Virus record (IMG/VR): IMGVR_UViG_3300009430_000004
Location: 154,089-218,088 of that record
DNA length: 64,000 nt
Reading direction: 5' to 3' (one strand)
Part shown: positions 7,463-63,423 of the stretch, in pieces
Layout of the letters: each line of letters starts with the position of its first letter
How positions within the stretch are numbered: the stretch's first letter is position 1
The notes under the pieces: generated by a model
What the model saw: the letters and a program-made list of their open reading frames with translations, nothing else
The model's database searches: none
Told to the model about the DNA's origin: nothing
Made by a program: the position numbers and the translations under genes

Positions 7463-7474
7463 TATTAAATTGTT
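7463..7474 (-). promoter_or_regulatory. Late promoter AACA-N6-TA (tail fibre operon)
   Basis: AACA ATTTAA TA. Confidence 0.7.
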
Positions 7475-7507
7475 TTTAATAACCAAAATTATTCCGAGTT
7501 AAAGGGC

Positions 7508-7557
7508 AAATGTGGGATGTAAGCAAGCTTAAAAGCAATTGCTTACATCCCATATTT
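7508..7557 (-). terminator. Intrinsic terminator, 19-bp stem
   Basis: AAATGTGGGATGTAAGCAA / TTGCTTACATCCCATATTT. Confidence 0.7.
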
Positions 7558-7563
7558 AGCATT

Positions 7564-8352
7564 TTATAACTTTCGTATATAAGTTGCACTCACAAATCCT
7601 ATACCTGACGAAATAACTGTTGTAGGCACAGGAATTGACCACCAACCATTTTGGAGGTTCATTAATTTAACTCTAGTATTCATTTCTAATTCACAGATAA
7701 CAGGGTAATTTGTGCCCCTACCTGATCTCACATTAAGCATTTTAGCAGTTGTTACTCCATATACTTCATTTGATGGAACTGCTGCTTCAGGTAATATAGC
7801 AATTCCTAAGTGGTCAAGGATACCATAAGCAATCGCAATACCCATCTTCTGTTGTTCTGGGATAGTATCCACTATCTGTTTGTCAACATCATTGTCGATG
7901 AAGGCTCCTTCAACGATAATTGCAGTCATATCAGTTTGTCTGATTACACCGTAGTAATCTGTTTTCCCATTTGTGCTTTTTTTTGAGAATGTTGGGTTAG
8001 GTCTAAAGTTTTGACCTGTTACAGTATGAACTCTTTCAACAACTTTTTTAGCTAAATCAGTGCCTTTTCCGTAGAAAATGCTATGGATAGCCTCAGCTCC
8101 GTCTCCACCACCAGCATTGTAATGGATTGAAACAAAATAGTCAGCTCCCCATTTATTAGCCATGTCGCATCTTTCTGTAAGTCCAACATACCTATCATCG
8201 CTTCGTGTTAATCCCACTGTTAACCCATGCCGAACAAGTACCTCTTTACATTTTAGTGTTGTAACAAGATTCATGTTCTTTTCAACAAGACCATTTGCTA
8301 CAGCACCAGGTTCATTTCCACCATGTCCAGCGTCTAACCATACCTTTGGCAT
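7564..8352 (-). CDS. N-acetylmuramoyl-L-alanine amidase (Amidase_3) with C-terminal SH3b
   Basis: DAGHGG..E..N, SIHYNA, IVEGAF Zn/catalytic motifs; LNVRSGRGTNY..I SH3b motif. Confidence 0.9.
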   Translation of the reverse strand: MPKVWLDAGHGGNEPGAVANGLVEKNMNLVTTLKCKEVLVRHGLTVGLTRSDDRYVGLTERCDMANKWGADYFVSIHYNAGGGDGAEAIHSIFYGKGTDLAKKVVERVHTVTGQNFRPNPTFSKKSTNGKTDYYGVIRQTDMTAIIVEGAFIDNDVDKQIVDTIPEQQKMGIAIAYGILDHLGIAILPEAAVPSNEVYGVTTAKMLNVRSGRGTNYPVICELEMNTRVKLMNLQNGWWSIPVPTTVISSGIGFVSATYIRKL

Positions 8353-8375
8353 ATTATCAGCCCCTTTCTTTTTAT

Positions 8376-8387
8376 TAATTTAATGTT
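8376..8387 (-). promoter_or_regulatory. Late promoter (amidase-SH3)
   Basis: AACA TTAAAT TA. Confidence 0.7.
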
Positions 8388-8408
8388 TGTGATATGAAAA
8401 AAATACAT

Positions 8409-8444
8409 AAAAAATAAGGAATCGTGATATAAAACACGATTCCT
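8409..8444 (-). terminator. Intrinsic terminator
   Basis: AGGAATCGTG / CACGATTCCT with A-tract. Confidence 0.75.
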
Positions 8445-8449
8445 CACCT

Positions 8450-9604
8450 TTAACCTTCTACCAATACTCTGTAGGTATTTGGTCCTACAACGCTATCATC
8501 AGCAATGTGATGATTCCATTGATATTCTTTAATTTTTCCTGCTGTAAGCGGTCCGAAACATCCATCTGGATCTGCCCCAACAGCAGTTTGAACCCATCTA
8601 ACAGCCTCTCCCCTACTACCAATTCTAAGAACTGGCATCTTAGCATAGGTACTCTTTGTTAAAGCACCAACACTACCATCAACATCAAGAAGATTTCCAT
8701 TCTTGTCTGTTATTCCAAGAGCTCTTGTTAACTCTTGGTATGCTCTAACTTTACTAGAGCCACCAGGAACAGGTTTATTTAGTTCTGCAATAGCTTCATT
8801 AAGCTTTCCTAATGTCTTAGGACCTGCAACACCATCATCTTCTCCTGCACCAAGATACTTTAATTGGAATGCTTTAACAGCAGCTTCTGTTCTTGGACCA
8901 AAATCTCCATCAGCAGATAGTTGATATCCAAGTTTAACGAGCTTTAATTGCATTTCCATAACTGTTGTACTCTTATCTCCTCTTCTGAGGCAAGTTATTC
9001 CAGGGTTTGCTTTTGGCTTCTGTACAGGAATTACTGGTGCACCATTTTGAGTAGGCATTCCAGCGGCATCCAATATGCCATGAGCTATAGCAATCCCAAA
9101 TCTTTGTTGTTCTTCAACAGTATCCACTATTTTACTATCGGCACTATCAACAAATGCTCCTTCAACAATTACAGGAGGTGCATTGTTACCTCTAATAACG
9201 CCATAATAGTCAGTTCCTCTTGAATTTAATCTTGTGTAGGTTGGCTTTGGTCTAGTATTTTGTCCTAATTCGGACACGATTCTGTTAACGATACGTGATG
9301 CTAAAATATCATCTGTCATTCCGTGGAAGATACTATGGATGGCTTCCACCCCATCCCCACCACCAGCATTGTAGTGAATGGACACAAAGAAATCAGGTCC
9401 CCAAGCATTTGACAAAGCACATCTTTCATCAAGATCGAGATAAATGTCAGTTGTTCGGGACATTCCAACAATAACACCATGTCTCTCAAGTTCTACCTTA
9501 CAAGCAATTGCTGTTGTGAGATTCATGTGTTTTTCAATTAAGTTACCAGAAACGGCACCAGGATCAGAGCCACCATGACCAGGGTCTAACCATACTTTTA
9601 GCAT
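8450..9604 (-). CDS. N-acetylmuramoyl-L-alanine amidase (Amidase_3) with three PG-binding repeats
   Basis: DPGHGGSDPGA, SIHYNA, IVEGAF; DGDFGPRTEAAVKAFQ, DGSVGALT, DGCFGPLT..IKEYQ PG_binding_1 motifs. Confidence 0.9.
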   Translation of the reverse strand: MLKVWLDPGHGGSDPGAVSGNLIEKHMNLTTAIACKVELERHGVIVGMSRTTDIYLDLDERCALSNAWGPDFFVSIHYNAGGGDGVEAIHSIFHGMTDDILASRIVNRIVSELGQNTRPKPTYTRLNSRGTDYYGVIRGNNAPPVIVEGAFVDSADSKIVDTVEEQQRFGIAIAHGILDAAGMPTQNGAPVIPVQKPKANPGITCLRRGDKSTTVMEMQLKLVKLGYQLSADGDFGPRTEAAVKAFQLKYLGAGEDDGVAGPKTLGKLNEAIAELNKPVPGGSSKVRAYQELTRALGITDKNGNLLDVDGSVGALTKSTYAKMPVLRIGSRGEAVRWVQTAVGADPDGCFGPLTAGKIKEYQWNHHIADDSVVGPNTYRVLVEG

Positions 9605-9635
9605 GGGTTGTCACTCCTTCTTTGTTATAGATTCT

Positions 9636-9647
9636 TAATAGAATGTT
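9636..9647 (-). promoter_or_regulatory. Late promoter (amidase-PGBD)
   Basis: AACA TTCTAT TA. Confidence 0.7.
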
Positions 9648-9650
9648 AAA

Positions 9651-10197: not shown

Positions 10198-11148
10198 TTA
10201 TTTATCGAGAGTCATAAGGTCGGCATAAATCTTAGCCCCATTAACGTCTACAATATCCTCAAGGACATATTGATTGTTTATATACGCCCCATTAGTAACT
10301 GACAAAACGTTGTAAAGAAAATAGGGAAATGATTCTAATGCCAGTAATGCTGCTGCATCATACATATGAATATATGCCTCCATGTAGCTCCTTACAGTTA
10401 AATCTTTAAGTCCTAGATTCATACCCTCTTTTGTTAGAGCCTTAACAAATGTTGAGAAGTCAGTGAAATCTTCTGGAACCATCATATCATTAATCTCTTT
10501 TAAAACGAAAGGATTACCATTTACACAATTTTTAAGTGCATAGTTAGTAACCATTTCACTATCGGTTAAACCCAGCATATTGATAAGATAGAACTTGCTT
10601 GCAAGGAATAGTACCTTATGCATTTTGCTCTTATCAACATTTAATGCATATTTCTTATTTAATACTCTAACGAACATGTTTGAGTACACCGCAGAACCGT
10701 TTGTAATGATAACATTACGAGTTGCTATTTGCTTACTGTAATGATAGCAGAGCTTAGCAAGATATGCAGATTCAATCATTGTATAAAGTTTCTTAGGGTC
10801 AATGTTAACATTGCCGTTTTCTTTATTCATTGTACCATACACATCAACTACAACAACAGCTACTACTTTATCAGCAGCATTTTTAGTTAAGAAGAATGGC
10901 ATACATGAAGGTATTTTAGCCCCATCTGGTGAATACATAAGCATGATATCCCCAGTTTCAACTTCATTAAGAACTTTATACTTTAATGGGAATTTAAAGT
11001 TCTTGTTTATTATCATAAATGCCTCTTCAAGGTTGTTCTTCTTGAGAACAGTTCCATTTTGTAATATTTTGGCTATATTGTTTGTAACTGCCCCGCTTTG
11101 ATTAAGATTCCTATATATGAAGGTATCTTGAAGCGTTTTGAATGACAT
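10198..11148 (-). CDS. Putative virion structural protein
   Basis: Long ORF; start moved to ATG 11148 behind GAAAGGA RBS and late promoter 11179..11190. Confidence 0.55.
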   Translation of the reverse strand: MSFKTLQDTFIYRNLNQSGAVTNNIAKILQNGTVLKKNNLEEAFMIINKNFKFPLKYKVLNEVETGDIMLMYSPDGAKIPSCMPFFLTKNAADKVVAVVVVDVYGTMNKENGNVNIDPKKLYTMIESAYLAKLCYHYSKQIATRNVIITNGSAVYSNMFVRVLNKKYALNVDKSKMHKVLFLASKFYLINMLGLTDSEMVTNYALKNCVNGNPFVLKEINDMMVPEDFTDFSTFVKALTKEGMNLGLKDLTVRSYMEAYIHMYDAAALLALESFPYFLYNVLSVTNGAYINNQYVLEDIVDVNGAKIYADLMTLDK

Positions 11149-11178
11149 ATTACCACATCCTTTCACACTTTTTAATAT

Positions 11179-11190
11179 TATTAGTATGTT
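11179..11190 (-). promoter_or_regulatory. Late promoter
   Basis: AACA TACTAA TA. Confidence 0.7.
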
Positions 11191-19098: not shown

Positions 19099-19133
19099 TA
19101 TATATTATATGTAGGTATCAGAACAAATTTATA
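19099..19133 (+). promoter_or_regulatory. Early (19099) and late (19122) promoters in tandem
   Basis: TATATATTAT ATGTAG GTA; AACA AATTTA TA. Confidence 0.65.
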
Positions 19134-19150: not shown

Positions 19151-19312
19151 ATGGAACCACCAAAGGTTTTAGCAGACCTTATGAAACCTTTGACTCAAAG
19201 GAACATACAATTGGCGACAGAAACGCCAGAAGAAAAAATGCAACGAATAAAAGACCAATTTGGTCTTTACCATGGTCCTGGTAAAAGGAAGAAAAAGAAG
19301 AAGAAAAAATAA
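19151..19312 (+). CDS. 53-aa protein with poly-lysine tail (not in ORF track)
   Basis: MEPPKVL...GPGKRKKKKKKK; AAGAAGGG RBS; early and late promoters directly upstream. Confidence 0.65.
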   Translation: MEPPKVLADLMKPLTQRNIQLATETPEEKMQRIKDQFGLYHGPGKRKKKKKKK

Positions 19313-20108: not shown

Positions 20109-20130
20109 ATAATTATATTATTAGGAGGTA
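20109..20130 (+). repeat. 22-bp shared leader, copy 1
   Basis: ATAATTATATTATTAGGAGGTA, identical at 34853 and 45321. Confidence 0.9.
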
Positions 20131-20766: not shown

Positions 20767-20778
20767 AACATTATATTG
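20767..20778 (+). promoter_or_regulatory. Late-type promoter (topoisomerase B)
   Basis: AACA TTATAT TG. Confidence 0.55.
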
Positions 20779-23263: not shown

Positions 23264-23273
23264 TATATATTAT
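23264..23273 (+). promoter_or_regulatory. Early motif (topoisomerase A)
   Basis: TATATATTAT. Confidence 0.6.
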
Positions 23274-26419: not shown

Positions 26420-26431
26420 AACAAATTAGTA
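26420..26431 (+). promoter_or_regulatory. Late promoter
   Basis: AACA AATTAG TA. Confidence 0.65.
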
Positions 26432-28216: not shown

Positions 28217-28244
28217 TAATTTATTGTTTTAAAACAATTAAATA
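28217..28244. promoter_or_regulatory. Back-to-back late promoters sharing a 16-bp palindrome
   Basis: ATTGTTTTAAAACAAT; AACA-N6-TA on both strands. Confidence 0.75.
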
Positions 28245-31333: not shown

Positions 31334-31345
31334 AACAATTAAATA
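31334..31345 (+). promoter_or_regulatory. Late promoter (RNAP beta-C fragment)
   Basis: AACA ATTAAA TA. Confidence 0.7.
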
Positions 31346-33206: not shown

Positions 33207-33218
33207 AACATAGAAATA
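33207..33218 (+). promoter_or_regulatory. Late promoter
   Basis: AACA TAGAAA TA. Confidence 0.65.
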
Positions 33219-33635: not shown

Positions 33636-33654
33636 TATATATTATCTTTCTGTA
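33636..33654 (+). promoter_or_regulatory. Early promoter (tubulin)
   Basis: TATATATTAT CTTTCT GTA. Confidence 0.65.
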
Positions 33655-34843: not shown

Positions 34844-34874
34844 AACAAAAAAATAATTATATTATTAGGAGGTA
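34844..34874 (+). promoter_or_regulatory. Late promoter fused to 22-bp shared leader, copy 2
   Basis: AACA AAAAAA TA then ATTATATTATTAGGAGGTA. Confidence 0.75.
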
Positions 34875-35843: not shown

Positions 35844-35855
35844 AACAAATATTTA
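35844..35855 (+). promoter_or_regulatory. Late promoter
   Basis: AACA AATATT TA. Confidence 0.6.
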
Positions 35856-38145: not shown

Positions 38146-38155
38146 TATATATTAT
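38146..38155 (+). promoter_or_regulatory. Early motif (nvRNAP beta-C)
   Basis: TATATATTAT. Confidence 0.6.
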
Positions 38156-38183: not shown

Positions 38184-40496
38184 ATGAAAGGAGACAGGCA
38201 AATGTCAAATGTTCAACCGAAACCACAATTAAGAAAAGAAAAAGACTATATTAATACGACAACGATAAGGTTGAAAGAGACCTTATGTGAAAAAGAGGAA
38301 AAGTACCATTTTAAAGATGATATATTCGGTATGACATTACTAACGAACCCTGGATATATAAGTGCTTCAAGAAATATAATGTTTACATCACATTTGAGGC
38401 AGTTCGTTAACCTGTTGAACCCTGAGTTTCCAAAGGTGTTTACCAACTATGAAAATATAGTTGGTAAATACTCAACTGGATATTATAGGGCGAAAACAGA
38501 TTTAAAGGTAGTTGATAAAATAGCTAAGTTCGGCAACGGAGTATTGGACAATCATCTATATCTTCTATTCACATATGATGAAGAGAATGATAAATATGAT
38601 GTTATTCAGAAACGTATAGTTGAAGACTTAACAGAAAAGTTCGGGTTCCCTTACAATAATGAAGTAATGGATGCTAAGGAACCAGGAGATGAAGTAAGAG
38701 CAGGAGAGGTGTTATACAAGACACCGTCATATGATGAGGACATGAATTACTGTTATGGTAAGAATGTCAAGTTCATGTATCTGCTAGATAATGACACCAT
38801 AGAGGACGCAATAAAGTGTTCTAAGTCATTTGCAAAGTCTATGAAATCTAAGGAAGTAGAAACTGTTAAAGTGTCCCTAAATGATAACGATATATTCTGT
38901 AATTATTATGGGACAAACGAAGAGTACAAGTGCTTCCCAGATATTAATGAGTTTATAAAGGATAAGATAGTTTGTGTTAAACGAAGAATACACAACAATC
39001 AGCTTTTATATGATGTAAAGAAATCAAATCTAAGAAAAATCAATTTTATGTCAGACAGCCTATCATTCTGTGAAGGTAGAATTGTAGACATAAATATCTA
39101 TTCAAATAAACCAATAGAAGAGATAGAAGACAATAGCTTTAATAGGCAATTATTAAAATATATTAAAATGCAGAGAGAATTCTACATCAAGGTTTATGAG
39201 AGATGTAAAAAGATAATAGACTCTGGCTCAAAGTATTCCAGTGAAGTTAACTTCTACTATAAGAAAGCTAAGAACATTCTCGATGAAAAGTATAAATGGA
39301 AAGAAGAAGATAATTCAGTATTCAGTAATATGATTATTGAATTCTTAATCGAGAGAGATGTTGAACTTTCAGTGGGACAGAAGATTACAGGACGATATGG
39401 AAATAAGGGAGTAGTATCTGAAATACTTCCAGACGAGGAAATGCCGTTCTTGGAAACTGGGGAAAGAGTTGATATCATATTCAATACTCTCGGCGTTATA
39501 AACAGAACAAATTCATTCCAGTTAATGGAGCAGTCAATTAACTTTATTTGTAACAGAGTAAGGGAAAGACTGAAGATTATGAATGATTTGAAAGAGAAGG
39601 AAAAATTATTATTTAAGATAATTAATTACTTCAATGACAAGCAGGCTGATAGTCTGCATGATTACTATAAGAGATTGGCTAAAGTCGACAAAGAAGATTT
39701 CTTTGAAGATATTATAGAAAGAGGAATATTTGTTCATATCCCGCCACTATGGGAAGACAGGAGTCTATTCGATAGACTTAACGACATTTATAAAGAATTC
39801 ACATGGATTAAACCATATGATGTTTATGTCAATAGGTTTGGTAGAAAGATAAAGATGTTGAAACAGTTAATAGTCGGGGATATGTACGTTATAAAATTAA
39901 AACAAACATCAAAGAAAGGTTTCTCGGTAAGAGCAACAGGTTCTCTTAGTAAGAGAGGCGTTCCAGAGAAATCTAATAAGGCTAAAAATCATCAGGAGCT
40001 TTATTCAAGAACACCTATAAGAATAGGTATTGATGAAAATCTCAATACTGCAATTGGTGTTGAAACCGAAGAAATAGCTAAGATCCACTTATTCTATAGG
40101 TCATCAGTTATAGGAAGACGAGACCTAGGAGAAAGATTAACAACAAATATTAAGGAAGTAAAGGAATTTAAATATTCACCAGAGTTTAAGAATAGAAATG
40201 TTGAGATTCTTCAAGCTTATCTTAAAGCAATGGGTCTGAAAATAGACTTTGAAGAGGATAAGTATTTCATAGATATATTCCTAGGTAGTATGGAGGAATA
40301 TAATTATGGGGATAAAACCTTTATATGCACTAGGAGAGAGTTTGAAGATAGAAAAACTAGGATGGACGTTGAAACTGACTTCCGAGAAAAGAACTATTTC
40401 GTTGGCTCTAAGGCTGAATATGAGGAAGCTGTCGATAAAAGAGTCAATGATGTCAATTTAAGAAAGTCTAAGTATGTAATAGATGTAAAAATGTAA
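38184..40496 (+). CDS. RNA polymerase beta C-terminal half, probably non-virion RNAP
   Basis: TIEDAI, GQKITGRYGNKGVVS..LPDEEMP, VDIIFNTLGVINR, VGDMYVIKLK motifs; early motif upstream. Confidence 0.9.
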   Translation: MKGDRQMSNVQPKPQLRKEKDYINTTTIRLKETLCEKEEKYHFKDDIFGMTLLTNPGYISASRNIMFTSHLRQFVNLLNPEFPKVFTNYENIVGKYSTGYYRAKTDLKVVDKIAKFGNGVLDNHLYLLFTYDEENDKYDVIQKRIVEDLTEKFGFPYNNEVMDAKEPGDEVRAGEVLYKTPSYDEDMNYCYGKNVKFMYLLDNDTIEDAIKCSKSFAKSMKSKEVETVKVSLNDNDIFCNYYGTNEEYKCFPDINEFIKDKIVCVKRRIHNNQLLYDVKKSNLRKINFMSDSLSFCEGRIVDINIYSNKPIEEIEDNSFNRQLLKYIKMQREFYIKVYERCKKIIDSGSKYSSEVNFYYKKAKNILDEKYKWKEEDNSVFSNMIIEFLIERDVELSVGQKITGRYGNKGVVSEILPDEEMPFLETGERVDIIFNTLGVINRTNSFQLMEQSINFICNRVRERLKIMNDLKEKEKLLFKIINYFNDKQADSLHDYYKRLAKVDKEDFFEDIIERGIFVHIPPLWEDRSLFDRLNDIYKEFTWIKPYDVYVNRFGRKIKMLKQLIVGDMYVIKLKQTSKKGFSVRATGSLSKRGVPEKSNKAKNHQELYSRTPIRIGIDENLNTAIGVETEEIAKIHLFYRSSVIGRRDLGERLTTNIKEVKEFKYSPEFKNRNVEILQAYLKAMGLKIDFEEDKYFIDIFLGSMEEYNYGDKTFICTRREFEDRKTRMDVETDFREKNYFVGSKAEYEEAVDKRVNDVNLRKSKYVIDVKM

Positions 40497-42426: not shown

Positions 42427-42448
42427 TATATATTATAACAAAGTAATA
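42427..42448 (+). promoter_or_regulatory. Overlapping early and late promoters
   Basis: TATATATTAT AACAAA GTA and AACA AAGTAA TA. Confidence 0.65.
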
Positions 42449-43142: not shown

Positions 43143-43172
43143 ATATATTATTCTCTTGTAAACATAACAATG
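43142..43172 (+). promoter_or_regulatory. Early and late promoters (ligase)
   Basis: TATATATTAT TCTCTT GTA; AACA TAACAA TG. Confidence 0.65.
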
Positions 43173-45292: not shown

Positions 45293-45342
45293 AACATATC
45301 AATGAAGGCAAAAATAAATTATAATTATATTATTAGGAGGTA
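45293..45342 (+). promoter_or_regulatory. Late promoter plus 22-bp shared leader, copy 3
   Basis: AACA TATCAA TG; leader 45321-45342. Confidence 0.75.
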
Positions 45343-46306: not shown

Positions 46307-46561
46307 ATGGATATGTTAGATGGAAAGCACCTTACAGAACCTTGTGAGGTGTTTATTGGTTATGTGACATTTAAAGATGGCACTAAAGAAGTATACCATA
46401 CAGCTCAGAAATCTAAAGAATCTGCACAAGCTTTCTTTGAAATAATGGCAACATCTTACGGGATGTTTGAATATAAAGATATAAAGGTTGTACCATTAAA
46501 TGAAGCTCTATTAGATTCTGGATATAAGGTTATTGCAATTGCAACAGTCCCAACGGAGTAA
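46307..46561 (+). CDS. Hypothetical protein
   Basis: 84 aa, AGGGGGG RBS. Confidence 0.6.
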   Translation: MDMLDGKHLTEPCEVFIGYVTFKDGTKEVYHTAQKSKESAQAFFEIMATSYGMFEYKDIKVVPLNEALLDSGYKVIAIATVPTE

Positions 46562-46580: not shown

Positions 46581-46599
46581 CATATATTATATATTCGTA
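46581..46599 (+). promoter_or_regulatory. Early promoter variant (nvRNAP beta-N)
   Basis: CATATATTAT ATATTC GTA. Confidence 0.6.
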
Positions 46600-46671
46600 A
46601 GGAGGTGTGAATAAAATCAGTTTTATTTTATATTGACACAAAAAATCTATGTTCCTGAAGGGGGAAATTCG

Positions 46672-48342
46672 ATGAAAGACTTTATAAAATCGTATAAAAA
46701 CCCTAACGAGAGCCGAATAAATTTCGGACTCATGAATCGAGAATACGATGATGATTTAATCCAGTATCTCGTGAATAGTTGTAAATCCCTTGAGGTTCTA
46801 AAGAATATCAAGTTTCTAGGTTATGATTATACTGATGATGAAACTAAGATAGACCTCAATGATTACATGACAACTCGTAAAAAGAGTAAGAAAAAGGTTG
46901 ATACGAAGTATATGTATCTACAAGATAGTAGATACGGGGAGCTGAAGTTAAAATTCATGCTCAAATGTAAGGATGAAACATTCCAATTAACAAAGAAACT
47001 TCTAGTCCCAGTTCCAGATGAAAATGGATACTATACAATAAAGGGAAAGAAGTATTTCTTATTATATCAGCTTGTCGATGCGTCGACATACACAACACGA
47101 CAAAACCTAACTCTGAAATCTCTTATGCCTATAACGGAAAAGAGAAATCAGAAAACCTATTCAGATACAGAAGGAAATAGCTATACTGCTCCAGCGTATG
47201 TGATATATGTATTCAGAAAAGAAGTAGACATTTTACTGTTTTATTTCGCAAAGATAGGTGTTAAGAAAACCTTAGATTACTTCTCAGTGAGTCAAATAAT
47301 TAAATTCAGAGAAGATATCGTAGACAAGGAAAACAACATCTATTTTTCGATCAATAGCAAAATGGTGCTAGAAGTAAATCGTTACTTCTTTTTGAAGTAT
47401 CAATACGTGCAGAGTATAATATTCATGATTCTAAACATTTGCTCGAATAGATTGTCATTTGATAATCTTGAGAACAAAACGTACTGGATAGAGAAAATAG
47501 GTAGCATGAATGCTACAAATGCTTATAATTATTATGAGAAAGGTTTAAGCAGTTTAACTTATTTTGATAGACTGCTGGATGAAACCACAAAGGATATTCT
47601 CAAGTTACATGATGAGAACAAGAGAAGTATCTATGCAATCGTAAGATGGATGATTCAGAACTTCAATGAGCTAAGAAAGAAAGATAATCTGGCTCTTGAA
47701 AATAAACGACTAAGATGTAATGAATATATTGCATCACTATTAACTAAAGCATTTAGTGATAGACTTAATCGTATAATAGGTTTGGGAAATAAGATATCTA
47801 TAGACAAGATAAAAGAGATATTCAAATTCCCTGGCGATATCATTATGCAACACCTATATAAGTCTGGATTGCTACGTTATGATGACAAGATTAACGACAT
47901 GGACTTCTTTAGTAAGTTCAGATATACTTTAAAGGGACCTAATAGTTTAGGTAATAAGAATGATAATAATATCTCCATAAAGTATAGGGGAATCCATCCT
48001 TCTTATATAGGAAGGATTGACATAAACGTTTGCGGTAATTCAGACCCAGGAACATCTGGTGTTATAACACCATTTTGTGAAACAGATGGGTTGTATTTTG
48101 ACGGAAAGAATGAACCAGAAGAGTTTAAATACAATTTTGAGAAAGATATTATTGACCGTAAGAGAGAGACTTCAGATAAGTATTTCATTGATGTTGGATA
48201 TGAAAACATAACAGACTACTTCAATGTCCATGAAAGATTCGCTAAGGTCAATAGAGGTATAACAATCACAGAGATTGAAAAGGAAGACTTTACTAAATAC
48301 TTTATTAAAATTAATATCAATGATGGGGATGATGAGATATAA
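46672..48342 (+). CDS. RNA polymerase beta N-terminal half, probably non-virion RNAP
   Basis: YTIKGKKYFLLYQL, SKFRYTLKGP, RGIHPSYIGRIDI..GNSDPG match beta fork/Rif regions; start moved to ATG 46672. Confidence 0.85.
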   Translation: MKDFIKSYKNPNESRINFGLMNREYDDDLIQYLVNSCKSLEVLKNIKFLGYDYTDDETKIDLNDYMTTRKKSKKKVDTKYMYLQDSRYGELKLKFMLKCKDETFQLTKKLLVPVPDENGYYTIKGKKYFLLYQLVDASTYTTRQNLTLKSLMPITEKRNQKTYSDTEGNSYTAPAYVIYVFRKEVDILLFYFAKIGVKKTLDYFSVSQIIKFREDIVDKENNIYFSINSKMVLEVNRYFFLKYQYVQSIIFMILNICSNRLSFDNLENKTYWIEKIGSMNATNAYNYYEKGLSSLTYFDRLLDETTKDILKLHDENKRSIYAIVRWMIQNFNELRKKDNLALENKRLRCNEYIASLLTKAFSDRLNRIIGLGNKISIDKIKEIFKFPGDIIMQHLYKSGLLRYDDKINDMDFFSKFRYTLKGPNSLGNKNDNNISIKYRGIHPSYIGRIDINVCGNSDPGTSGVITPFCETDGLYFDGKNEPEEFKYNFEKDIIDRKRETSDKYFIDVGYENITDYFNVHERFAKVNRGITITEIEKEDFTKYFIKININDGDDEI

Positions 48343-52769: not shown

Positions 52770-53108
52770 ATGGAAAATCAAATTAAACAACAAGACGACA
52801 CAATACATGCAAATTTGTCTGAAAATGCATCAATTACCTTTCACATGGGGAACCCACATGTGGTCATGACTATATCTGCTGAGGGAATAATTTCCTTTCC
52901 AGATTCAATCAAGGAAGCTAATGCAGATGAGATTGCAAAGCAGGTTATAACCTTATTAGAGGATAATACTGCAACTAAAGTCGCTAATCTAAAGCAAATA
53001 CTTAGAAGTGTGGATGGAAGAAAATTTGCTGATTATGGGACAATGAATTTTGTGAAAGCTGTGTTATTTGACAAAATTTATAATTTATATATTGGGGATG
53101 GTAAGTAA
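52770..53108 (+). CDS. Hypothetical protein
   Basis: Start moved to ATG 52770 after AAGGGGGG. Confidence 0.55.
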   Translation: MENQIKQQDDTIHANLSENASITFHMGNPHVVMTISAEGIISFPDSIKEANADEIAKQVITLLEDNTATKVANLKQILRSVDGRKFADYGTMNFVKAVLFDKIYNLYIGDGK

Positions 53109-53109
53109 T

Positions 53110-54740: not shown

Positions 54741-54778
54741 ATTCCTATTACAACAAGATTGTAATAGGAATATTTTTT
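54741..54778 (+). terminator. Terminator containing late promoter
   Basis: TTCCTATTACA / TGTAATAGGAA. Confidence 0.7.
54752..54763 (+). promoter_or_regulatory. Late-type promoter inside terminator hairpin
   Basis: AACA AGATTG TA. Confidence 0.55.
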
Positions 54779-54803: not shown

Positions 54804-55130
54804 ATGAATAAAAAAGAAGGAATAACAAAGATATTTAATGATTATGTAGAAAAAGGAGGTTGTGTGATGGATTTAATACCAAAGATTGAAGCTTTATACA
54901 ACGATGATGACATAACATTCAAGATTACTAATATAATAAAAGAAAAAACTATGTTCGGTTCAACAACTATAGAAGCCGAGTGTGTTCAGGATGGGGTAAC
55001 TGTTATAGTTACAATGCCGTATGATGTGGCTAATGATAATAAAAAGATAAAAGAGGTTTTGAAGCAGGCATATATGGCAAAACCTAAGCTCACTGAACAA
55101 GAAACTCTTAATGTAGGAGATATACTCTAA
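54804..55130 (+). CDS. Hypothetical protein
   Basis: 108 aa, AGGAGG RBS. Confidence 0.6.
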   Translation: MNKKEGITKIFNDYVEKGGCVMDLIPKIEALYNDDDITFKITNIIKEKTMFGSTTIEAECVQDGVTVIVTMPYDVANDNKKIKEVLKQAYMAKPKLTEQETLNVGDIL

Positions 55131-58810: not shown

Positions 58811-59992
58811 TTAATCATCGTCATCTTCATCAGGAGATACTACTTCAATTACTTTGTAACTTCTTCCTCTTTCATCAGTAGCGTATCTTCCATCATCACT
58901 AAATTTAACTCTACCTATATCTTTCTTTCTTGGTAGAGGGTAGTCAAATACCTGTTGATTATTTTTATCTAATGCAACAAATTCCCAGTCTCCTGTGTCT
59001 ATCCATTTCTTAACGACAACTCTAACACCTCTATTTTCATATTCGATGTATTTACTTCCCTCTTCGCTTCTAAATGGATTTTCTACACTACTGAGTCTTT
59101 CTTCTATCAGACGGGAATATCTGTCCATTTCGATGTCAGACATACCATCATCCTTACTCTTTTCAATTTGTTCAACCAATGAATCAACTTCATCATCATC
59201 GTCATCATTATTTCTAGAACCAAACTCTTTAACAAAGTTGTTTCTTCCATACTTAAGAACATTCTTAAGATATGTAGTTGCAATCATTTCTGATGTAGCT
59301 CCACCTTGAGCGTTAGCTGCATTTGTCTTACCATCAGCCTTGATTTTAAGGTCTGCAATAGTTTTCTTAATAGATGATATTTCCTTGATAATACTAAGCT
59401 TGTTTTGCTTAGATGAAAGTATGGACATAATAAGGTCATTAACATACTTACTAACGCCCCTTGTCTTACTAGCCTCTAACCCCTCGTATTTCTTATCAAG
59501 TCTTTTACCAAACTTATTAACTTCATCAAGAAGATTGTATAAAAGAGTTAATTCTTCAGCAAACTCTTTCTTATAAGGATTTTCTTCCTTCTTAAGTTTG
59601 TCATAACTCTTTTTCTGTTCATCTATGATCCCGTCATCTATACCATCTTCACTGTCTTCTCTAAATATCTCATCTATATCAATGAGATTAGCCGCACTGG
59701 TAGCATCATAATCGTCATCATTGGAACCGTCTTCATTGGTGGATACGTTTCCAATTTCACCTGCCGACATGAACTCCAGGTCACTGAATTCCTTATTCTT
59801 CTTCTTTTTTTTCTTGTCCTTTTTCTTCTTAGATAAAGAAGATAAAGTAAATACTTCCTCTTTCTCCTCAGGCTCTTTTACCTTAGGAGGTGAAGGTATT
59901 GTACTTCTCAGAGTCTTAATCTCCGAGATAAGGCTATCTTTCTTAATAGGCATATTAATATTAATAGTGTACTGGTCGCTCATAATAAACAC
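58811..59992 (-). CDS. Late coiled-coil protein with poly-Lys and poly-Asp tracts
   Basis: 393 aa, AGGAGG RBS, late promoter 60002. Confidence 0.65.
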   Translation of the reverse strand: MFIMSDQYTININMPIKKDSLISEIKTLRSTIPSPPKVKEPEEKEEVFTLSSLSKKKKDKKKKKKNKEFSDLEFMSAGEIGNVSTNEDGSNDDDYDATSAANLIDIDEIFREDSEDGIDDGIIDEQKKSYDKLKKEENPYKKEFAEELTLLYNLLDEVNKFGKRLDKKYEGLEASKTRGVSKYVNDLIMSILSSKQNKLSIIKEISSIKKTIADLKIKADGKTNAANAQGGATSEMIATTYLKNVLKYGRNNFVKEFGSRNNDDDDDEVDSLVEQIEKSKDDGMSDIEMDRYSRLIEERLSSVENPFRSEEGSKYIEYENRGVRVVVKKWIDTGDWEFVALDKNNQQVFDYPLPRKKDIGRVKFSDDGRYATDERGRSYKVIEVVSPDEDDDD

Positions 59993-60001: not shown

Positions 60002-60013
60002 TATTATAGTGTT
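60002..60013 (-). promoter_or_regulatory. Late promoter
   Basis: AACA CTATAA TA. Confidence 0.7.
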
Positions 60014-60046: not shown

Positions 60047-60114
60047 TATATATTATATAAGTGATAATAAATACCATACCAATGGTTTTTAATTTTATTC
60101 TCAACAAAAATATA
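60047..60114 (+). promoter_or_regulatory. Early (60047) and late (60103) promoters (DNA polymerase)
   Basis: TATATATTAT; AACA AAAATA TA. Confidence 0.65.
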
Positions 60115-60135: not shown

Positions 60136-61950
60136 ATGGAGTTTCTGAAGAATATAGATAAAGACAATATTATGCTAATAAACGTAATATATCACAATGG
60201 AAAAAAAGAAACCAGTTATAACGACTATCTCGATATAGTATATAAAGAGTTAGATACAGGTAATAAGAAAGTTGTTACAATCGAAAATCCTGAAATGGAT
60301 ATATATTTTGCAAAAGAAAATTGCCGAAACTATGACTACAATAAGTCATTTATTGAGATGAAAGATGCTGAAACACATAGATGTAAGTTTAAAGAAATGC
60401 CATTCTATATCGCCAAACAAGCAGGTGATGAGTACATTAGGTATGTAAAGAACTGCATCGAGACAAAAAATAGGGCTGGGATCAATAACATACATAAGTA
60501 TAAGTATGTATTTGGTTCAGACTATGATATTGAAAATTGGTACAGGATACAATGGTATCTTAATTATACCAACGATAAACCAAAACCGATAACTAAGCAG
60601 TTCCTAGATATAGAGGTTGACGGTATTGATGTTGAGGGGGTTCCTGTTGATGGTGTCTGCCCGATTAATGCAGTAACCATAGTGGATGAACAATCACTAT
60701 CATGTCATACGTTCTTATTAAGGAATGATAAAAATCCTCAGATACAGGAGTTTGAGGATACAATTGATGATTTTATCAATGACCTCCATGAAGCATTTGA
60801 TGATGTTTATGGTAAGTTAGATTATAGGATTTACATGTATGATGAGGATAGAGAAATAGACCTTATAAGGGATATATTTAAACTCATTAATACAATGAAA
60901 CGAGATTTCCTTATGATATGGAACATGGGGTATGATATTCCGTACATCACAGGTAGGATAATTGAGCTTGGATATGACCCAGTTGAAATCATGTGTCATA
61001 AGGATTTTAAGATAAAGGAGTTATTCTATAAGAAGGATAACTTAAACTTCAAGGTAGAGAATAAGTCAGACTACTTTAAGATATCTTCATATACCTATTT
61101 TGCAGACCAAATGTTATTATATGCAGGCTTAAGAAAAGGGCAAAGTGAGTTAAGGTCTCATGCTCTTAACTATATAGCACAGGTAGAAATAGGTGATGAA
61201 AAGCTAGACTATCATGAAGAAGCTGATATCAAAACATTACCTTATGTAAACTATAAGAAGTTTGTAATGTATAATATAAAAGACGTTCTGCTACAATTAG
61301 GTATTGAGATAAAAACTCATGATATCGACAATATATACTTAAGAGCGTATTCTAATGCAACTTCTTATTATAAGATATTTAAACAGACTGTCTTCTTAAA
61401 GAATCGTGCTTATTTAGAGTTTTATCAGCAGGGATTAGTTATTGGCAATAATGTCAATATTGATTATGGTATTTCTAGGTACGATTCTAAAGATGATGAC
61501 GATGAAGATGAAAAGTTTGACGGAGCTTTAGTTGCTGACCCAATGTTAAACTGTCACACTGGTATCGAATTATTACAGCATAAGAGTATGTTTATATTCG
61601 ATAATGTAGTAGACATGGACTTCAGCAGTATGTATCCTCATATAATTATAACATTCAATGTTGCACCTAACTGCATGATAGGTAAGTTAGTCCTCAACAA
61701 AGAAATAAAGGATATGTACAATAAGAAAGATATTGACAATGATAAGTATGATGCAGGTAAAGATTTTGTTGATAACATGCTAATTAAGAATGTTGCTAAC
61801 ATGGGAACTAAGTGGTTCAAATTACCTGATGTTGTCGAGCTAGATAGCTTGGTGCGAAATAAGTTTAAAATTCAAGACACAACTAAGATAGTTATGTCTA
61901 AAGAACAATTTAGCAAGTATTTCTTAGAAGGATTAAAAATTGTTGTTTAA
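60136..61950 (+). CDS. Family B DNA polymerase, N-terminal half (exonuclease plus motif A)
   Basis: LDIE (ExoI), WN..YDIPY (ExoII), YNIKD (ExoIII), DMDFSSMYP; no motif B or C. Confidence 0.85.
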   Translation: MEFLKNIDKDNIMLINVIYHNGKKETSYNDYLDIVYKELDTGNKKVVTIENPEMDIYFAKENCRNYDYNKSFIEMKDAETHRCKFKEMPFYIAKQAGDEYIRYVKNCIETKNRAGINNIHKYKYVFGSDYDIENWYRIQWYLNYTNDKPKPITKQFLDIEVDGIDVEGVPVDGVCPINAVTIVDEQSLSCHTFLLRNDKNPQIQEFEDTIDDFINDLHEAFDDVYGKLDYRIYMYDEDREIDLIRDIFKLINTMKRDFLMIWNMGYDIPYITGRIIELGYDPVEIMCHKDFKIKELFYKKDNLNFKVENKSDYFKISSYTYFADQMLLYAGLRKGQSELRSHALNYIAQVEIGDEKLDYHEEADIKTLPYVNYKKFVMYNIKDVLLQLGIEIKTHDIDNIYLRAYSNATSYYKIFKQTVFLKNRAYLEFYQQGLVIGNNVNIDYGISRYDSKDDDDEDEKFDGALVADPMLNCHTGIELLQHKSMFIFDNVVDMDFSSMYPHIIITFNVAPNCMIGKLVLNKEIKDMYNKKDIDNDKYDAGKDFVDNMLIKNVANMGTKWFKLPDVVELDSLVRNKFKIQDTTKIVMSKEQFSKYFLEGLKIVV

Positions 61951-61965: not shown

Positions 61966-62616
61966 ATGGAAGAAATATTATTTGACCTTACATCAAAGGA
62001 TGTAAAGAAATTAAATGAATTCAATCAGGTTGTTAAAAAGTATTTTAATAACTATTATTTATTTGAAGATGGAGTTGTTATAGGGGAAAGTATCCTAGAT
62101 AAGGGCTCGCACTGTTGTATCTCAACTATCATACCGATGGATAATATTCCTGAAGATTCAATTCCTTATTTTAACTCATCAGCCATATTTCAGTTGATTA
62201 AAGATAGGAAAAAGGAAATAAAAGCTGTAGTCATTAGCTATGGTAGAACATGCTTAAGACTTGCTGACGGTTTGGACTATACAATTGGTGGAATTATTAA
62301 AAAAGATGAGATTAAAAAAGAAATTAAAGATAGTTATGATTTAGCAAAAAGGATCATAGAAAAAACTGATAAAGAATCTGAGAAAATTGAGGATTCCACT
62401 ATCGACCAGTTAGTGGACAATGAAATTGTCACTTATGACAACGATGTTCATAAAGTAAGAATGACTAAAGAATTAATTCCTGCATTAAAGAAGGGATTGA
62501 ATGTTAATATTGCTTTTAATGACATAGAAGGTGATGAGACTAAATTTGAAACAATATTAATGACTGATAGGGAAGACATAAAAACTTATCATAAGTATAC
62601 TTGCATTAGATTCTAG
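61966..62616 (+). CDS. Hypothetical protein next to the polymerase gene
   Basis: 216 aa, AAGGAG RBS. Confidence 0.6.
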   Translation: MEEILFDLTSKDVKKLNEFNQVVKKYFNNYYLFEDGVVIGESILDKGSHCCISTIIPMDNIPEDSIPYFNSSAIFQLIKDRKKEIKAVVISYGRTCLRLADGLDYTIGGIIKKDEIKKEIKDSYDLAKRIIEKTDKESEKIEDSTIDQLVDNEIVTYDNDVHKVRMTKELIPALKKGLNVNIAFNDIEGDETKFETILMTDREDIKTYHKYTCIRF

Positions 62617-62645
62617 TGGCGATTTATCGCCACTTTATTTTTTTA
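62615..62645 (+). terminator. Intrinsic terminator
   Basis: AGTGGCGAT / ATCGCCACT. Confidence 0.65.
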
Positions 62646-62663
62646 TAGGAGGTAAAAAGATAG

Positions 62664-62942
62664 ATGTTTTTTAAGAAGTTAATGTCAATTAGTAAATTTA
62701 AATCCACTATAAAAGAAATAGAATCTGATAGATTCTTCTATTTTAAAGAAGAAATTATGAAGGAATTGATTCATAATAAGAAACTTGGCATTGTAAGTTT
62801 TAAAATTTACTTACCTAAGTTTATTCACGACAATCCAACCCTATATAAGGAATTTGAAGCATTCCTTAATAAGTTAGGTTATCAATTGGTTAAATATAAT
62901 ATCGGGGAATATATCGAAGAAGACCCTCGGTTAAGAAAATAA
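62664..62942 (+). CDS. Hypothetical protein
   Basis: 92 aa, AGGAGG RBS. Confidence 0.6.
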   Translation: MFFKKLMSISKFKSTIKEIESDRFFYFKEEIMKELIHNKKLGIVSFKIYLPKFIHDNPTLYKEFEAFLNKLGYQLVKYNIGEYIEEDPRLRK

Positions 62943-62946
62943 TTTT

Positions 62947-62958
62947 AACATAATTATA
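62947..62958 (+). promoter_or_regulatory. Late promoter
   Basis: AACA TAATTA TA. Confidence 0.65.
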
Positions 62959-62979
62959 AAAAAGAGGAGGGGATCGAGT

Positions 62980-63141
62980 ATGGGAGAAAAATATCCTGAA
63001 TGTCCGTATGCATTACAGTGTTGCTGTCATGTTGAAGGTTCTAATACTAAGCCCTGCGTGAGAAAAGAACAAGACAAAGCGGCTGGTAAGCCGAATTCAT
63101 TCGAACCTAAGTTCTGCACATATTCAATGAATCCCCCATAA
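62980..63141 (+). CDS. 53-aa Cys-rich late peptide (not in ORF track)
   Basis: MGEKYPECPYALQCCCHVEG..PC..FCTY; GAGGAGGGG RBS; own promoter and terminator. Confidence 0.7.
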   Translation: MGEKYPECPYALQCCCHVEGSNTKPCVRKEQDKAAGKPNSFEPKFCTYSMNPP

Positions 63142-63172
63142 GGTTTTTAACCTTATGGGTTATTTCATTTTT
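63128..63172 (+). terminator. Intrinsic terminator
   Basis: CCCATAAGG / CCTTATGGG. Confidence 0.65.
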
Positions 63173-63173
63173 A

Positions 63174-63199
63174 AACAATATATTGTGAACACAATAATA
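63174..63199 (+). promoter_or_regulatory. Two tandem late promoters for the ncRNA candidate
   Basis: AACA ATATAT TG and AACA CAATAA TA. Confidence 0.65.
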
Positions 63200-63378
63200 A
63201 GTCGGGGGATTAATATAGATTTTTAGAATTTTCCACAAATAAACCTCCTTAAAGCGTTTTGTTAATTAGTGTTTTAAAAGGCCCTTAAAATTGGTGAAAA
63301 ACTATCAATTCCTCCGACTTATTATTAACATAAAAAATAACCTATGTGTACATGAGTGTGCATATAGGTTATTTTTTT
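63185..63378 (+). ncRNA. Candidate late structured RNA (~180-190 nt) with anti-SD motif
   Basis: Two tandem AACA-N6-TR promoters, closing stem with G-U pair, own terminator, no ORF. Confidence 0.6.
63332..63378. terminator. Bidirectional terminator ending the ncRNA candidate
   Basis: AAAAAATAACCTATGTG / CATATAGGTTATTTTTT. Confidence 0.75.
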
Positions 63379-63411
63379 ATCCTTTATTTTGTAGTTATTA
63401 AAATTATCGGG

Positions 63412-63423
63412 AACAAAAATATA
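63412..63423 (+). promoter_or_regulatory. Late promoter (portal)
   Basis: AACA AAAATA TA. Confidence 0.7.

What the first reader, a model, noticed from the sequence alone, without database searches (positions are those of the whole stretch)
7463..63423. AR9-type AACA-N6-TR late promoters throughout suggest a uracil-DNA jumbo phage in a new host group
Seen: 24 exact AACA-N6-T(A/G) motifs, nearly all just upstream of gene starts on the coding strand (7463, 8376, 9636, 11179, 19122, 20031, 20767, 26420, 28217, 28233, 31334, 33207, 34844, 35844, 42437, 43161, 45293, 54752, 60002, 60103, 62947, 63174, 63188, 63412), plus AACT, TACA and ATCA variants. Structural and lysis genes have only this motif. 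The motif is short and occurs by chance in AT-rich DNA, so the evidence is its position. Known: Bacillus phage AR9 non-virion RNAP recognises this consensus on the template strand and requires deoxyuridines there; AR9/PBS1 DNA has U in place of T. Inference: the same mechanism is conserved, so this genome may contain dU. No dUTP-pathway or Ugi gene lies in this window.
Basis: partly seen in the sequence, partly recalled or inferred. Interest (0 to 1): 0.8.

Follow-up and report, generated by a model that had tools for sequence, protein, structure and literature searches.

The report
AR9-type promoters, but thymine DNA likely
The short AACA-N6-TA motif really does mark the late promoters of an uncultured 218-kb relative of Bacillus phage AR9, but the rest of the genome encodes a thymidylate synthase and lacks the uracil-selecting residue, so its DNA most likely contains thymine, not uracil.

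Summary

**Observation.** All 24 sites exist. The whole-window count is at chance (114 vs 118). In upstream intergenic DNA on the coding strand there are 20 sites, against 4 antisense and about 4 in shuffles. The excess occurs only at spacing N6.

**Whole genome.** I assembled the full 218,054-bp circular genome. The result replicates outside the window (43 sense, 9 antisense, 9 shuffled). Virion and lysis genes carry only this motif. nvRNAP genes carry only an AR9-type early box (TATATATTAT-N6-R). Replication genes carry both (Fisher p = 8e-7). All five AR9 nvRNAP subunits are present, including a gp226 homolog.

**Against dU.**
- The same genome has dCMP deaminase, a bona fide ThyA with its own late promoter, DHFR and a Tmk-like kinase.
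- No Ugi homolog is detectable.
- AR9's U-selective gp226 V206 is Gln here and Y210 is Gln, while the βN pocket residues R363 and K375 are kept.

**Best reading.** The AR9 two-polymerase programme is conserved in a phage that most likely has thymine DNA. It comes from groundwater and probably infects Clostridia.

The parts
7463..7474 (-). late promoter AACAATTTAATA, 41 nt before the 1261-aa virion/tail-fibre-like gene 3648-7433
8376..8387 (-). late promoter, 35 nt before endolysin 7564-8352
9636..9647 (-). late promoter, 43 nt before endolysin 8450-9604
11179..11190 (-). late promoter before virion protein 10198-11166 (ortholog of AR9 g281)
19122..19133 (+). late promoter before small ORF 19151-19312; early box at 19099 in the same spacer
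20767..20778 (+). probable late promoter (TG start) 38 nt before gyrB 20805-23231; lies inside a doubtful 46-aa ORF
26420..26431 (+). late promoter before 26451-26975, just after a terminator-like hairpin
28217..28228 (-). late promoter before 27014-28180 (AR9 g051 ortholog); one of a back-to-back divergent pair
28233..28244 (+). late promoter before 28271-29431 (AR9 g052 ortholog); partner of the divergent pair
31334..31345 (+). late promoter before 31375-32094 (matches the N-terminal part of AR9 g078, a virion RNAP-associated protein)
33207..33218 (+). late-type site before small ORF 33237-33413
34844..34855 (+). late promoter before 34882-35745; the predicted transcript starts with the repeated 18-mer leader
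35844..35855 (+). late promoter before 35885-36769
42437..42448 (+). late promoter directly after early box 42427-42436, before exonuclease 42475-43113 (AR9 g131); dual-promoter gene
43161..43172 (+). late promoter (TG) after early box 43142-43151, before NAD ligase 43185-45269 (AR9 g095); dual-promoter gene
45293..45304 (+). late promoter (TG) 57 nt before 45350-45703
54752..54763 (+). late promoter before 54804-55130 and the downstream SbcC gene 55161-57830
60002..60013 (-). late promoter before 58811-59992 (AR9 g142 ortholog)
60103..60114 (+). late promoter, with early box 60047-60056 upstream, before the DNA polymerase part 60136-61950 (AR9 g132); dual-promoter gene
62947..62958 (+). late promoter before small ORF 62980-63141
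63412..63423 (+). late promoter 43 nt before the portal gene (63455 onward, AR9 g128 ortholog, runs past the window end)
38146..38155 (+). early box TATATATTAT before the nvRNAP beta C-terminal half
46581..46590 (+). early-type box (CATATATTAT) before the nvRNAP beta N-terminal half
23264..23273 (+). early box before gyrA 23306-25705
33636..33645 (+). early box before the PhuZ-like tubulin gene 33696-34826
38184..40496 (+). nvRNAP beta C-terminal half, ortholog of AR9 gp089 (37% identity)
46633..48342 (+). nvRNAP beta N-terminal half, ortholog of AR9 gp105; -10 pocket residues R363 and K375 conserved
46307..46561 (+). 84-aa ORF at the position where AR9 has Ugi (g104); no sequence similarity to Ugi, function unknown

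Best explanation
The window is the last 64 kb of a 218-kb circularly permuted genome of an uncultured jumbo phage from groundwater, a distant relative of Bacillus phage AR9/PBS1. It keeps the AR9 transcription programme. A virion RNA polymerase reads early promoters (A-a-t-TATATATTAT-N6-purine). These drive the genes of a five-subunit non-virion polymerase: split beta, split beta-prime and a gp226-like sigma-like subunit. That enzyme then starts transcription at AACA-N6-T-A/G, with the final purine as the predicted +1. These sites lie about 30 nt upstream of the ribosome-binding sites of virion, morphogenesis and lysis genes. Replication genes carry both promoter types and would be expressed throughout infection. 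By analogy with AR9, the AACA element is read as 3'-TTGT-5' on the template strand by a pocket formed between the sigma-like subunit and beta-N. In contrast to AR9, the DNA most likely contains thymine. The phage makes its own dTMP (dCMP deaminase, then ThyA with DHFR, then a Tmk-like kinase), and thyA itself sits behind a late promoter. The sigma-like subunit has also lost the valine that excludes the thymine methyl group in AR9. Shown here: motif position, gene-class association, presence of the enzymes, residue identities. Inferred: the transcription start sites, which polymerase reads which motif, and the DNA chemistry.
For: Motif position: window 20 sense, 4 antisense, about 4 shuffled. 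Whole genome 64, 16, 13.5+-3.7. The 154 kb outside the window, an independent replication, 43, 9, 9.2+-3.1. N5 = 2 and N7 = 7. The median distance to the start codon is 41 nt. AR9 run through the same pipeline gives 76, 30, 17.2+-4.3. Six related contigs together give 45 sense sites against about 9 expected. The consensus is identical to the TSS-mapped AR9 late (AACA-6N-TA/G) and early (AAATATATATTAT-6N-G) promoters. TATATATTAT occurs 21 times in the window against 1.4 expected, and a purine follows at N6 in 46 of 49 sites genome-wide. Gene class: 15 of 19 orthologs of AR9 virion genes have the late motif only and none has an early box. Of 12 replication/transcription orthologs, none is late-only and 9 have an early box (Fisher p = 7.6e-7). 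Enzyme: orthologs of gp089, gp105, gp270 and gp154, and a gp226 homolog (HMM E = 1.4e-65, in the AR9 order GroEL-g227-g226-primase; PDB 7S01_A E = 9.6e-19). Thymine: ThyA scores 353 bits against the NCBIfam equivalog cut-off of 327 over its full length and has its catalytic Cys, RSxD, Asn, HxY and C-terminal AI. DHFR is adjacent. The pair is linked to phage genes in the JGI, ENA and Logan assemblies. thyA has AACAAATATTTA 40 nt upstream, and its GC and GC3 are typical of the genome. AR9 has no ThyA or DHFR. The literature states that dU genomes require the absence of TS/ThyX (PMC7824862). gp226 V206 is Q and Y210 is Q by MAFFT and by HMMER, and V206G makes AR9 accept T (PMC9209446).
Against: No transcript 5' ends are available (no RNA run was listed), so start sites and polymerase assignment rest on analogy with AR9. 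There are no chemical data on the DNA. Gln at the V206 position still has a C-beta and is larger than Val, so sequence alone does not show that thymine fits. The -11 position in AR9 is discriminated by DNA-backbone geometry rather than a side chain, which cannot be assessed here. No phage dUTPase was found, which is also a trait of dU phages. The dCMP deaminase and the Tmk-like kinase (below the equivalog cut-offs) would serve a dUTP pathway equally well. A weak homolog of AR9's HAD deoxyribonucleotidase exists (E = 9e-5). Ugi-like inhibitors are small and fast-evolving and could be missed.
Confidence: 0.7

Rival explanations
1. One reading: the phage is a dU-DNA phage like AR9/PBS1, and its nvRNAP needs template-strand deoxyuridines at -11/-10. 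ThyA-DHFR would then be a host-derived passenger or serve another purpose.
For: The late-promoter consensus is the same as in AR9, whose enzyme is U-dependent. The nearest cultured relatives include known dU phages. No dUTPase was found. dCMP deaminase is present and a weak HAD nucleotidase homolog exists. The beta-N pocket residues R363 and K375 are conserved.
Against: A full-length, catalytically intact ThyA with adjacent DHFR sits behind a phage late promoter and has genome-typical composition. Published analysis treats absence of TS/ThyX as a requirement for dU genomes. No Ugi homolog was found genome-wide. The valine reported as absolutely conserved in dU-phage gp226 homologs is Gln here, and Y210 is Gln.
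Confidence: 0.1
2. The motif is not a phage-polymerase promoter. It would instead be a host sigma-factor -10-like element, or an RNA-level signal (processing or translation-control site) in 5' leaders.
For: The motif lies at a rather fixed distance from start codons (median 41 nt, IQR 38-48), as a leader element might. Four late genes share an identical 18-nt leader. No transcript data exist.
Against: No conserved -35-like element lies upstream of it. The consensus and spacing equal those of the TSS-mapped AR9 late promoter. The cognate five-subunit enzyme is encoded. The motif separates virion genes from replication genes exactly as in AR9. It is similarly enriched in AR9 and in six relatives. 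It commonly follows terminator-like hairpins.
Confidence: 0.05
3. The DNA carries neither plain T nor U but a modified pyrimidine made from the dTMP/dUMP pool, with the remodelled gp226 pocket adapted to that base.
For: The 2.1bis helix is remodelled rather than simply made smaller (V206Q, V205K, Y210Q). Many genes are of unknown function, including a radical-SAM protein.
Against: ThyA scores as a canonical thymidylate synthase equivalog and pairs with DHFR, which hydroxymethylases do not need. No known hypermodification enzyme family appeared in any Pfam table. The genome assembled cleanly in four independent data sets.
Confidence: 0.07

Closest known systems
Bacillus phage AR9 / PBS1 (Takahashivirus): late promoters read by the gp226-containing non-virion RNAP
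   Same: Same late consensus AACA-N6-T-A/G and same early consensus TATATATTAT-N6-purine. Same three expression classes (early, late, dual-promoter). Orthologs of all five nvRNAP subunits and of vRNAP subunits. Local gene order is conserved (UvsX-betaC...ligase...betaN; GroEL-g227-g226-primase). The beta-N pocket residues R363 and K375 are conserved.
   Different: Protein identity is only 22-43%, and 25% for gp226. This genome encodes ThyA, DHFR, a class II RNR (NrdJ), PPK1 and a PhuZ-like tubulin, none of which matches AR9. It has no detectable Ugi. gp226 V206 is Q and Y210 is Q. The source is groundwater and the host is probably an anaerobic member of Clostridia rather than Bacillus.
AR9 gp226 V206G mutant (engineered T-tolerant holoenzyme, PMC9209446)
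   Same: Loss of the beta-branched valine at the position that abuts C5 of the -10 pyrimidine, while the rest of the recognition apparatus is kept.
   Different: The natural residue here is Gln, not Gly, and neighbouring positions (V205K, Y210Q) also differ. Whether thymine is accepted is untested.
phiKZ-type non-virion RNAP with gp68 (T-DNA, nucleus-forming jumbo phages)
   Same: A five-subunit nvRNAP with a gp226/gp68-family fifth subunit reading a very short late motif on (here predicted) thymine DNA. A PhuZ-family tubulin is present.
   Different: The phiKZ late motif is TATG at the start site, not AACA-N6-TA. No chimallin-like shell protein was detected here. By sequence this phage is far closer to AR9 than to phiKZ.

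Membership tests
AR9-type late (nvRNAP) promoter | Non-template consensus AACA-(6N)-T-A/G with strict spacing | tested here: met
   64 upstream sense sites genome-wide against 13.5+-3.7; N5 = 2, N7 = 7. Top non-SD/terminator gapped motif. Consensus from PMC5312081.
AR9-type late (nvRNAP) promoter | Sits in front of late (virion, lysis) genes, and together with an early promoter in front of continuously expressed genes | tested here: met
   15 of 19 virion-class orthologs are late-only with no early box. Of 12 replication/transcription orthologs, 9 have an early box and none is late-only. p = 7.6e-7.
AR9-type late (nvRNAP) promoter | Cognate enzyme: split beta/beta-prime core plus a gp226-family specificity subunit | tested here: met
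   Orthologs of gp089, gp105, gp270 and gp154. gp226 homolog HMM E = 1.4e-65, 7S01_A E = 9.6e-19.
AR9-type late (nvRNAP) promoter | Transcription starts at the final A/G of the motif | not testable with these tools
   No RNA run was listed for this genome.
AR9-type late (nvRNAP) promoter | Recognition on the template strand requiring dU at -11 and -10 | tested here: inconclusive
   Needs biochemistry. Proxies point away from U-dependence: V206Q and Y210Q and ThyA present. R363 and K375 of beta-N are conserved.
dU-DNA jumbo phages (PBS1/AR9, S6, phiR1-37) | No thymidylate synthase (ThyA or ThyX) | tested here: not met
   ThyA 279 aa, NF002495 353 bits against cut-off 327. Catalytic residues intact. 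DHFR adjacent. Criterion from PMC7824862.
dU-DNA jumbo phages (PBS1/AR9, S6, phiR1-37) | No dUTPase | tested here: met
   No dUTPase family in the precomputed Pfam tables or in my scans. A divergent enzyme could be missed.
dU-DNA jumbo phages (PBS1/AR9, S6, phiR1-37) | Uracil-DNA glycosylase inhibitor (Ugi-like) | tested here: inconclusive
   No tblastn hit to AR9 Ugi genome-wide at E<=0.1. An 84-aa ORF sits at the syntenic position but shows no similarity. The complex test with B. subtilis UNG returned 'no answer'.
dU-DNA jumbo phages (PBS1/AR9, S6, phiR1-37) | gp226 2.1bis helix with the conserved U-selective valine (AR9 V206) | tested here: not met
   AR9 KYSDVVIWTY against this phage YSHNKQIWTQ, so V206 aligns with Q in MAFFT and in HMMER. 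Across 158 family representatives Val occupies this position in 57%.
dU-DNA jumbo phages (PBS1/AR9, S6, phiR1-37) | Deoxyuridine replaces thymidine in virion DNA | not testable with these tools
   Requires LC-MS or UDG digestion of virion DNA.

The most novel reading that the evidence does not exclude
This phage carries a natural thymine-compatible version of the AR9 template-strand promoter-recognition system. The AACA-N6-TA promoter class and its gp226-type sigma-like factor would then be shared by a large uncultured clade regardless of DNA chemistry. Uracil selectivity would be a lineage-specific add-on set by the 2.1bis-helix residue (Val in dU phages, other residues in about 40% of family members).
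Probability: 0.55. Interest if true: 0.65.

Novelty: new variant of a known kind. Interest (0 to 1): 0.55.

Why it matters
AR9's non-virion polymerase is the only known RNA polymerase shown to need deoxyuridine in its promoter. That requirement has been proposed as the way the phage keeps a very short consensus from firing on host DNA. Here the identical consensus, with the identical early/late architecture, appears in a distant relative that encodes its own thymidylate synthesis and lacks the U-selecting valine. This suggests that the promoter class is older and broader than the uracil genome, and that U/T selectivity can switch in nature, as in the engineered V206G mutant. It gives a concrete pair of proteins and promoters for testing how a six-base template-strand motif is read on thymine DNA. 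It also warns against inferring DNA chemistry from promoter motifs alone. [quoted passage not shown]

Tried and rejected
1. Whole-window motif count as evidence: rejected, because it equals the shuffles.
2. Megablast of 20 kb against cultured phages: no match.
3. Finding this genome's gp226 with AR9 gp226 by word-indexed search and by a pattern scan of IMG/VR with a family alignment: only AR9-like sequences were returned. The exhaustive profile search gave 507 family members but no genomic context. The gene was found only by walking the contig.
4. Looking for relatives' gp226 with this phage's protein in IMG/VR: only its own contigs came back. tblastn against cultured phages gave one weak hit. 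So the planned correlation of the V206 residue with ThyA presence across genomes could not be done.
5. ThyA-bearing metagenome contigs as phage relatives: rejected, because they share only thyA and dfr.
6. Host assignment from the chemoreceptor gene in reference genomes: nothing found. From PPK1: mostly unnamed contigs of 200-270 kb.
7. RNA runs for TSS mapping: none was listed.
8. The Ugi hypothesis for the 84-aa ORF at the syntenic position: no similarity, and the complex prediction gave no answer.
9. A chimallin (phage-nucleus shell) candidate: no support.
10. The AACT, TACA and ATCA variants as a class: not supported as strand-specific, apart from a mild AACT excess.
11. A first assembly step misjoined because of a 1-bp indel between assemblies. 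It was detected and redone.

Full report
**Observation.** The window as a whole holds 114 AACA-N6-TR sites on both strands, and dinucleotide-preserving shuffles give 118, so there is no global excess. I built a simple ORF-based gene map and took the intergenic DNA upstream of each gene, oriented with the gene: 53 segments, 4,099 nt, 24% GC. That DNA holds 20 sense-strand sites, against 4 on the opposite strand and about 4 in shuffles (sd 2, maximum 13). Spacing N5 gives 0 and N7 gives 1. Permuted tetramers give 4 each. Twenty of the 27 upstream AACA tetramers are followed by N6-TR. The aligned sites read AACA-WWWWWW-T-A-A, 17-57 nt before the start codon. Four of the 24 sites (20031, 20767, 63174, 63188) are not in the canonical place.

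**What the genome is.** The 770-aa protein at 38184-40496 is an RNAP beta fragment. Its best cultured matches are AR9/PBS1 and close kin at 37% identity, then Listeria LPJP1, Staphylococcus S6-like phages and Yersinia phiR1-37. There is no nucleotide-level match to any cultured phage.

- The window is positions 154,089-218,088 of IMG/VR contig UViG_3300009430_000004.
- The same genome was assembled independently in JGI 3300025106, in ENA ERZ27245607 (218,197 bp) and in a Logan assembly of SRR5747425.
- By walking with exact-protein look-ups and tblastn-confirmed scans I closed a 218,054-bp circle that contains the window without a mismatch.
- The one listed sequencing run that holds it is a groundwater metagenome.

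**Promoters genome-wide.** On the whole genome (231 ORF-based genes, 165 upstream segments, 14,057 nt) the late motif occurs 64 times in sense, 16 in antisense and 13.5+-3.7 in shuffles.

- In the 154 kb outside the window, which played no part in forming the hypothesis, the figures are 43, 9 and 9.2+-3.1.
- The distance from AACA to the start codon has median 41 nt and IQR 38-48.
- An enumeration of all 4mer-N(3-9)-2mer patterns puts AACA-N6-TA (59 observed, 9.7 expected) first after Shine-Dalgarno and terminator-stem patterns.
- The same pipeline on AR9, where 94 late transcription start sites carry this motif (PMC5312081), gives 76, 30 and 17.2+-4.3.
- Six loci from related uncultured phages (50-67% protein identity) give 45 sense sites against about 9 expected.

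**A second motif.** TATATATTAT occurs 21 times in the window (1.4 expected) and 49 times in the genome. Its extended form, A-a-t-TATATATTAT-N6-purine (purine in 46 of 49 sites), equals the AR9 early consensus AAATATATATTAT-(6N)-G.

**Gene classes.** I mapped orthologs by tblastn against the complete AR9 record and used AR9's own annotation.

- Late motif only, no early box: 15 of 19 orthologs of virion genes. These include the portal, sheath, major capsid, prohead protease, tape measure, several virion proteins and a packaged vRNAP subunit. The remaining 4 have neither motif.
- Replication/transcription orthologs (12): 5 have the early box only (both nvRNAP beta halves, the gp226 homolog, gyrA, and one DNA-polymerase part whose nearest late-type site is 117 nt upstream). 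4 have both (the other DNA-polymerase part, ligase, exonuclease, nvRNAP beta-prime C). 3 have neither, and none is late-only.
- Fisher's exact test on late-only against any early box gives p = 7.6e-7.
- The two endolysins in the window are late-only.

This is the published AR9 scheme of early, late and continuously expressed genes.

**The enzyme.** Orthologs of all four nvRNAP core pieces are present: gp089 and gp105 in the window, gp270 and gp154. The specificity subunit was found at genome position 101,396-102,880. It is 494 aa and scores E = 1.4e-65 against an HMM of the gp226 family with near full-length coverage. It lies in the AR9 order GroEL-g227-g226-primase and sits behind an early box. 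It matches the solved AR9 gp226 chain 7S01_A at E = 9.6e-19. Orthologs of the vRNAP subunits g264, g189 and g145 are also present.

**The dU inference.** About 45 kb to the left of the window the genome carries a run of nucleotide-metabolism genes: a Tmk-like kinase, NrdJ, dCMP deaminase, ThyA and DHFR.

- ThyA (279 aa) scores 353 bits against the NCBIfam thymidylate synthase equivalog (cut-off 327), end to end.
- It has the nucleophilic Cys, the RSxD motif, the dUMP-specifying Asn, HxY and the C-terminal AI.
- It has AACAAATATTTA 40 nt upstream, after a terminator-like hairpin.
- Its GC and GC3 are typical of the genome.
- It lies on the same contigs as the polymerase genes in the JGI, ENA and Logan assemblies.
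- AR9 has no ThyA or DHFR.
- A comparative study of jumbo phages states that using U in place of T requires the absence of thymidylate synthase/ThyX and of dUTPase, as seen in PBS1-like phages (PMC7824862).
- No Ugi homolog is detectable in the genome.
- No dUTPase or ThyX was found either (and the Pfam tables).

The dCMP deaminase and the kinase would serve either pathway, so the ThyA-DHFR pair is the discriminating evidence.

**The U-selective pocket.** In the AR9 structure, the C5 atom of the -10 uracil lies 3.9 A from C-beta of gp226 V206. V206G makes the enzyme accept T, and the valine is reported as absolutely conserved in homologs from dU phages. I207 and Y210 of the same helix, and R363 and K375 of gp105, complete the pocket (PMC9209446). 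In this phage MAFFT and HMMER both align V205-V206-I207-W208-T209-Y210 with K-Q-I-W-T-Q. R363 and K375 of beta-N are conserved. Among 158 family representatives the V206 position is Val in 57% and varied in the rest. So the base-pairing-edge contacts are kept and the methyl-excluding residue is not. Sequence alone cannot show whether Gln admits a methyl group.

**Host.** The nearest cellular ThyA sequences (64-72% identity) are all from anaerobic Clostridia: Senegalia, Anaeromonas, Peptostreptococcus, Filifactor and Clostridium. They are closer than any cultured-phage ThyA (at most 58%). The metagenome contigs carrying the closest ThyA share only thyA and dfr with the phage, so the pair was probably acquired from such bacteria. 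A B12-dependent RNR, a radical-SAM protein and amidase/SH3 endolysins fit a Gram-positive anaerobe. This is a hint, not an assignment.

**Conclusion.** The motif is real and is best explained as the late promoter of a conserved AR9-type non-virion RNA polymerase. The step from 'same consensus' to 'same dU chemistry' fails on the genome's own gene content and on the specificity-subunit residue. The most likely state is thymine DNA read by a remodelled pocket. Direct proof needs nucleoside analysis, transcript 5' ends and in vitro transcription on T and U templates.

Noticed in passing
window 33696-34826 (+): A tubulin/FtsZ-family gene matching the PhuZ family (Pfam Tubulin 2.7e-20; phrog_4733 'tubulin PhuZ' 1.4e-11), behind an early box. 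It gave no tblastn match in AR9. No chimallin-like shell protein was found for the one plausible candidate (a 518-aa early-operon protein).
   Followed up: partly
window 20112-20129, 34856-34873, 45324-45341 (+); also genome position 121435: An identical 18-mer, ATTATATTATTAGGAGGT, occurs four times, always on the + strand and running into the ribosome-binding site. At 34844 the late promoter places the predicted +1 right at its start, so several genes would share one 5' leader.
   Followed up: partly
window 46307-46561 (+): An 84-aa acidic ORF (pI 4.9) lies directly upstream of the beta-N gene, exactly where AR9 has its 84-aa Ugi. There is no sequence similarity, no PHROG or Pfam hit, and the complex prediction with B. 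subtilis UNG returned no answer.
   Followed up: partly
window 53068-53913 (+): The metallo-beta-lactamase-fold ortholog of AR9 g022 lies here. One protein in the batch scan hit Pfam Anti-Pycsar Apyc1 (2e-8) and one hit Lactamase_B_2; both are most likely this protein. Outside the window an 84-aa protein has a weak Acb2/Tad1-hairpin hit (L034:4213-4467). These are possible anti-defence genes.
   Followed up: no
window 7564-8352 and 8450-9604 (-): Two adjacent Amidase_3 endolysins with different wall-binding ends (SH3_3 and PG_binding_1), each with its own late promoter.
   Followed up: no
window 28217-28244: Two late promoters lie back to back on opposite strands, 4 nt apart, and drive the divergent genes 27014-28180 and 28271-29431 (AR9 g051 and g052 orthologs).
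   Followed up: no
L024:16293-18452 (PPK1); L040:2026-4002 (chemoreceptor); L024:4050-4529 (GGDEF): The phage encodes a full polyphosphate kinase 1, a dCache_1/MCPsignal chemoreceptor-like protein and a GGDEF-domain protein. PPK1 has 55-72% identical copies on many unnamed contigs of 200-270 kb, which points to a large uncultured clade of related jumbo phages.
   Followed up: partly
L036:6988-7695 (genome position about 97.6 kb): A weak homolog (25.6% identity over 125 aa, E = 9e-5) of AR9 g151, the HAD 5'(3')-deoxyribonucleotidase that I take, from my own knowledge rather than a test here, to be a candidate dTMP-removing enzyme in AR9/PBS2. Its role next to a ThyA-encoding genome is unclear.
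   Followed up: no
L035:10987 onward (genome position 141573-153494, -): A 3,973-aa tape-measure-like protein with a Peptidase_C39_2 hit, behind a late promoter. The IMG and ENA assemblies appear to differ in length in this gene: the match spans 1,929 nt for a 499-aa query.
   Followed up: no
window 1-64000: No tRNA genes in the window (ARAGORN). Other batch-scan hits in the window are DUF4116, LPD28, DUF488-N3a and a weak MINDY deubiquitinase-like match.
   Followed up: no
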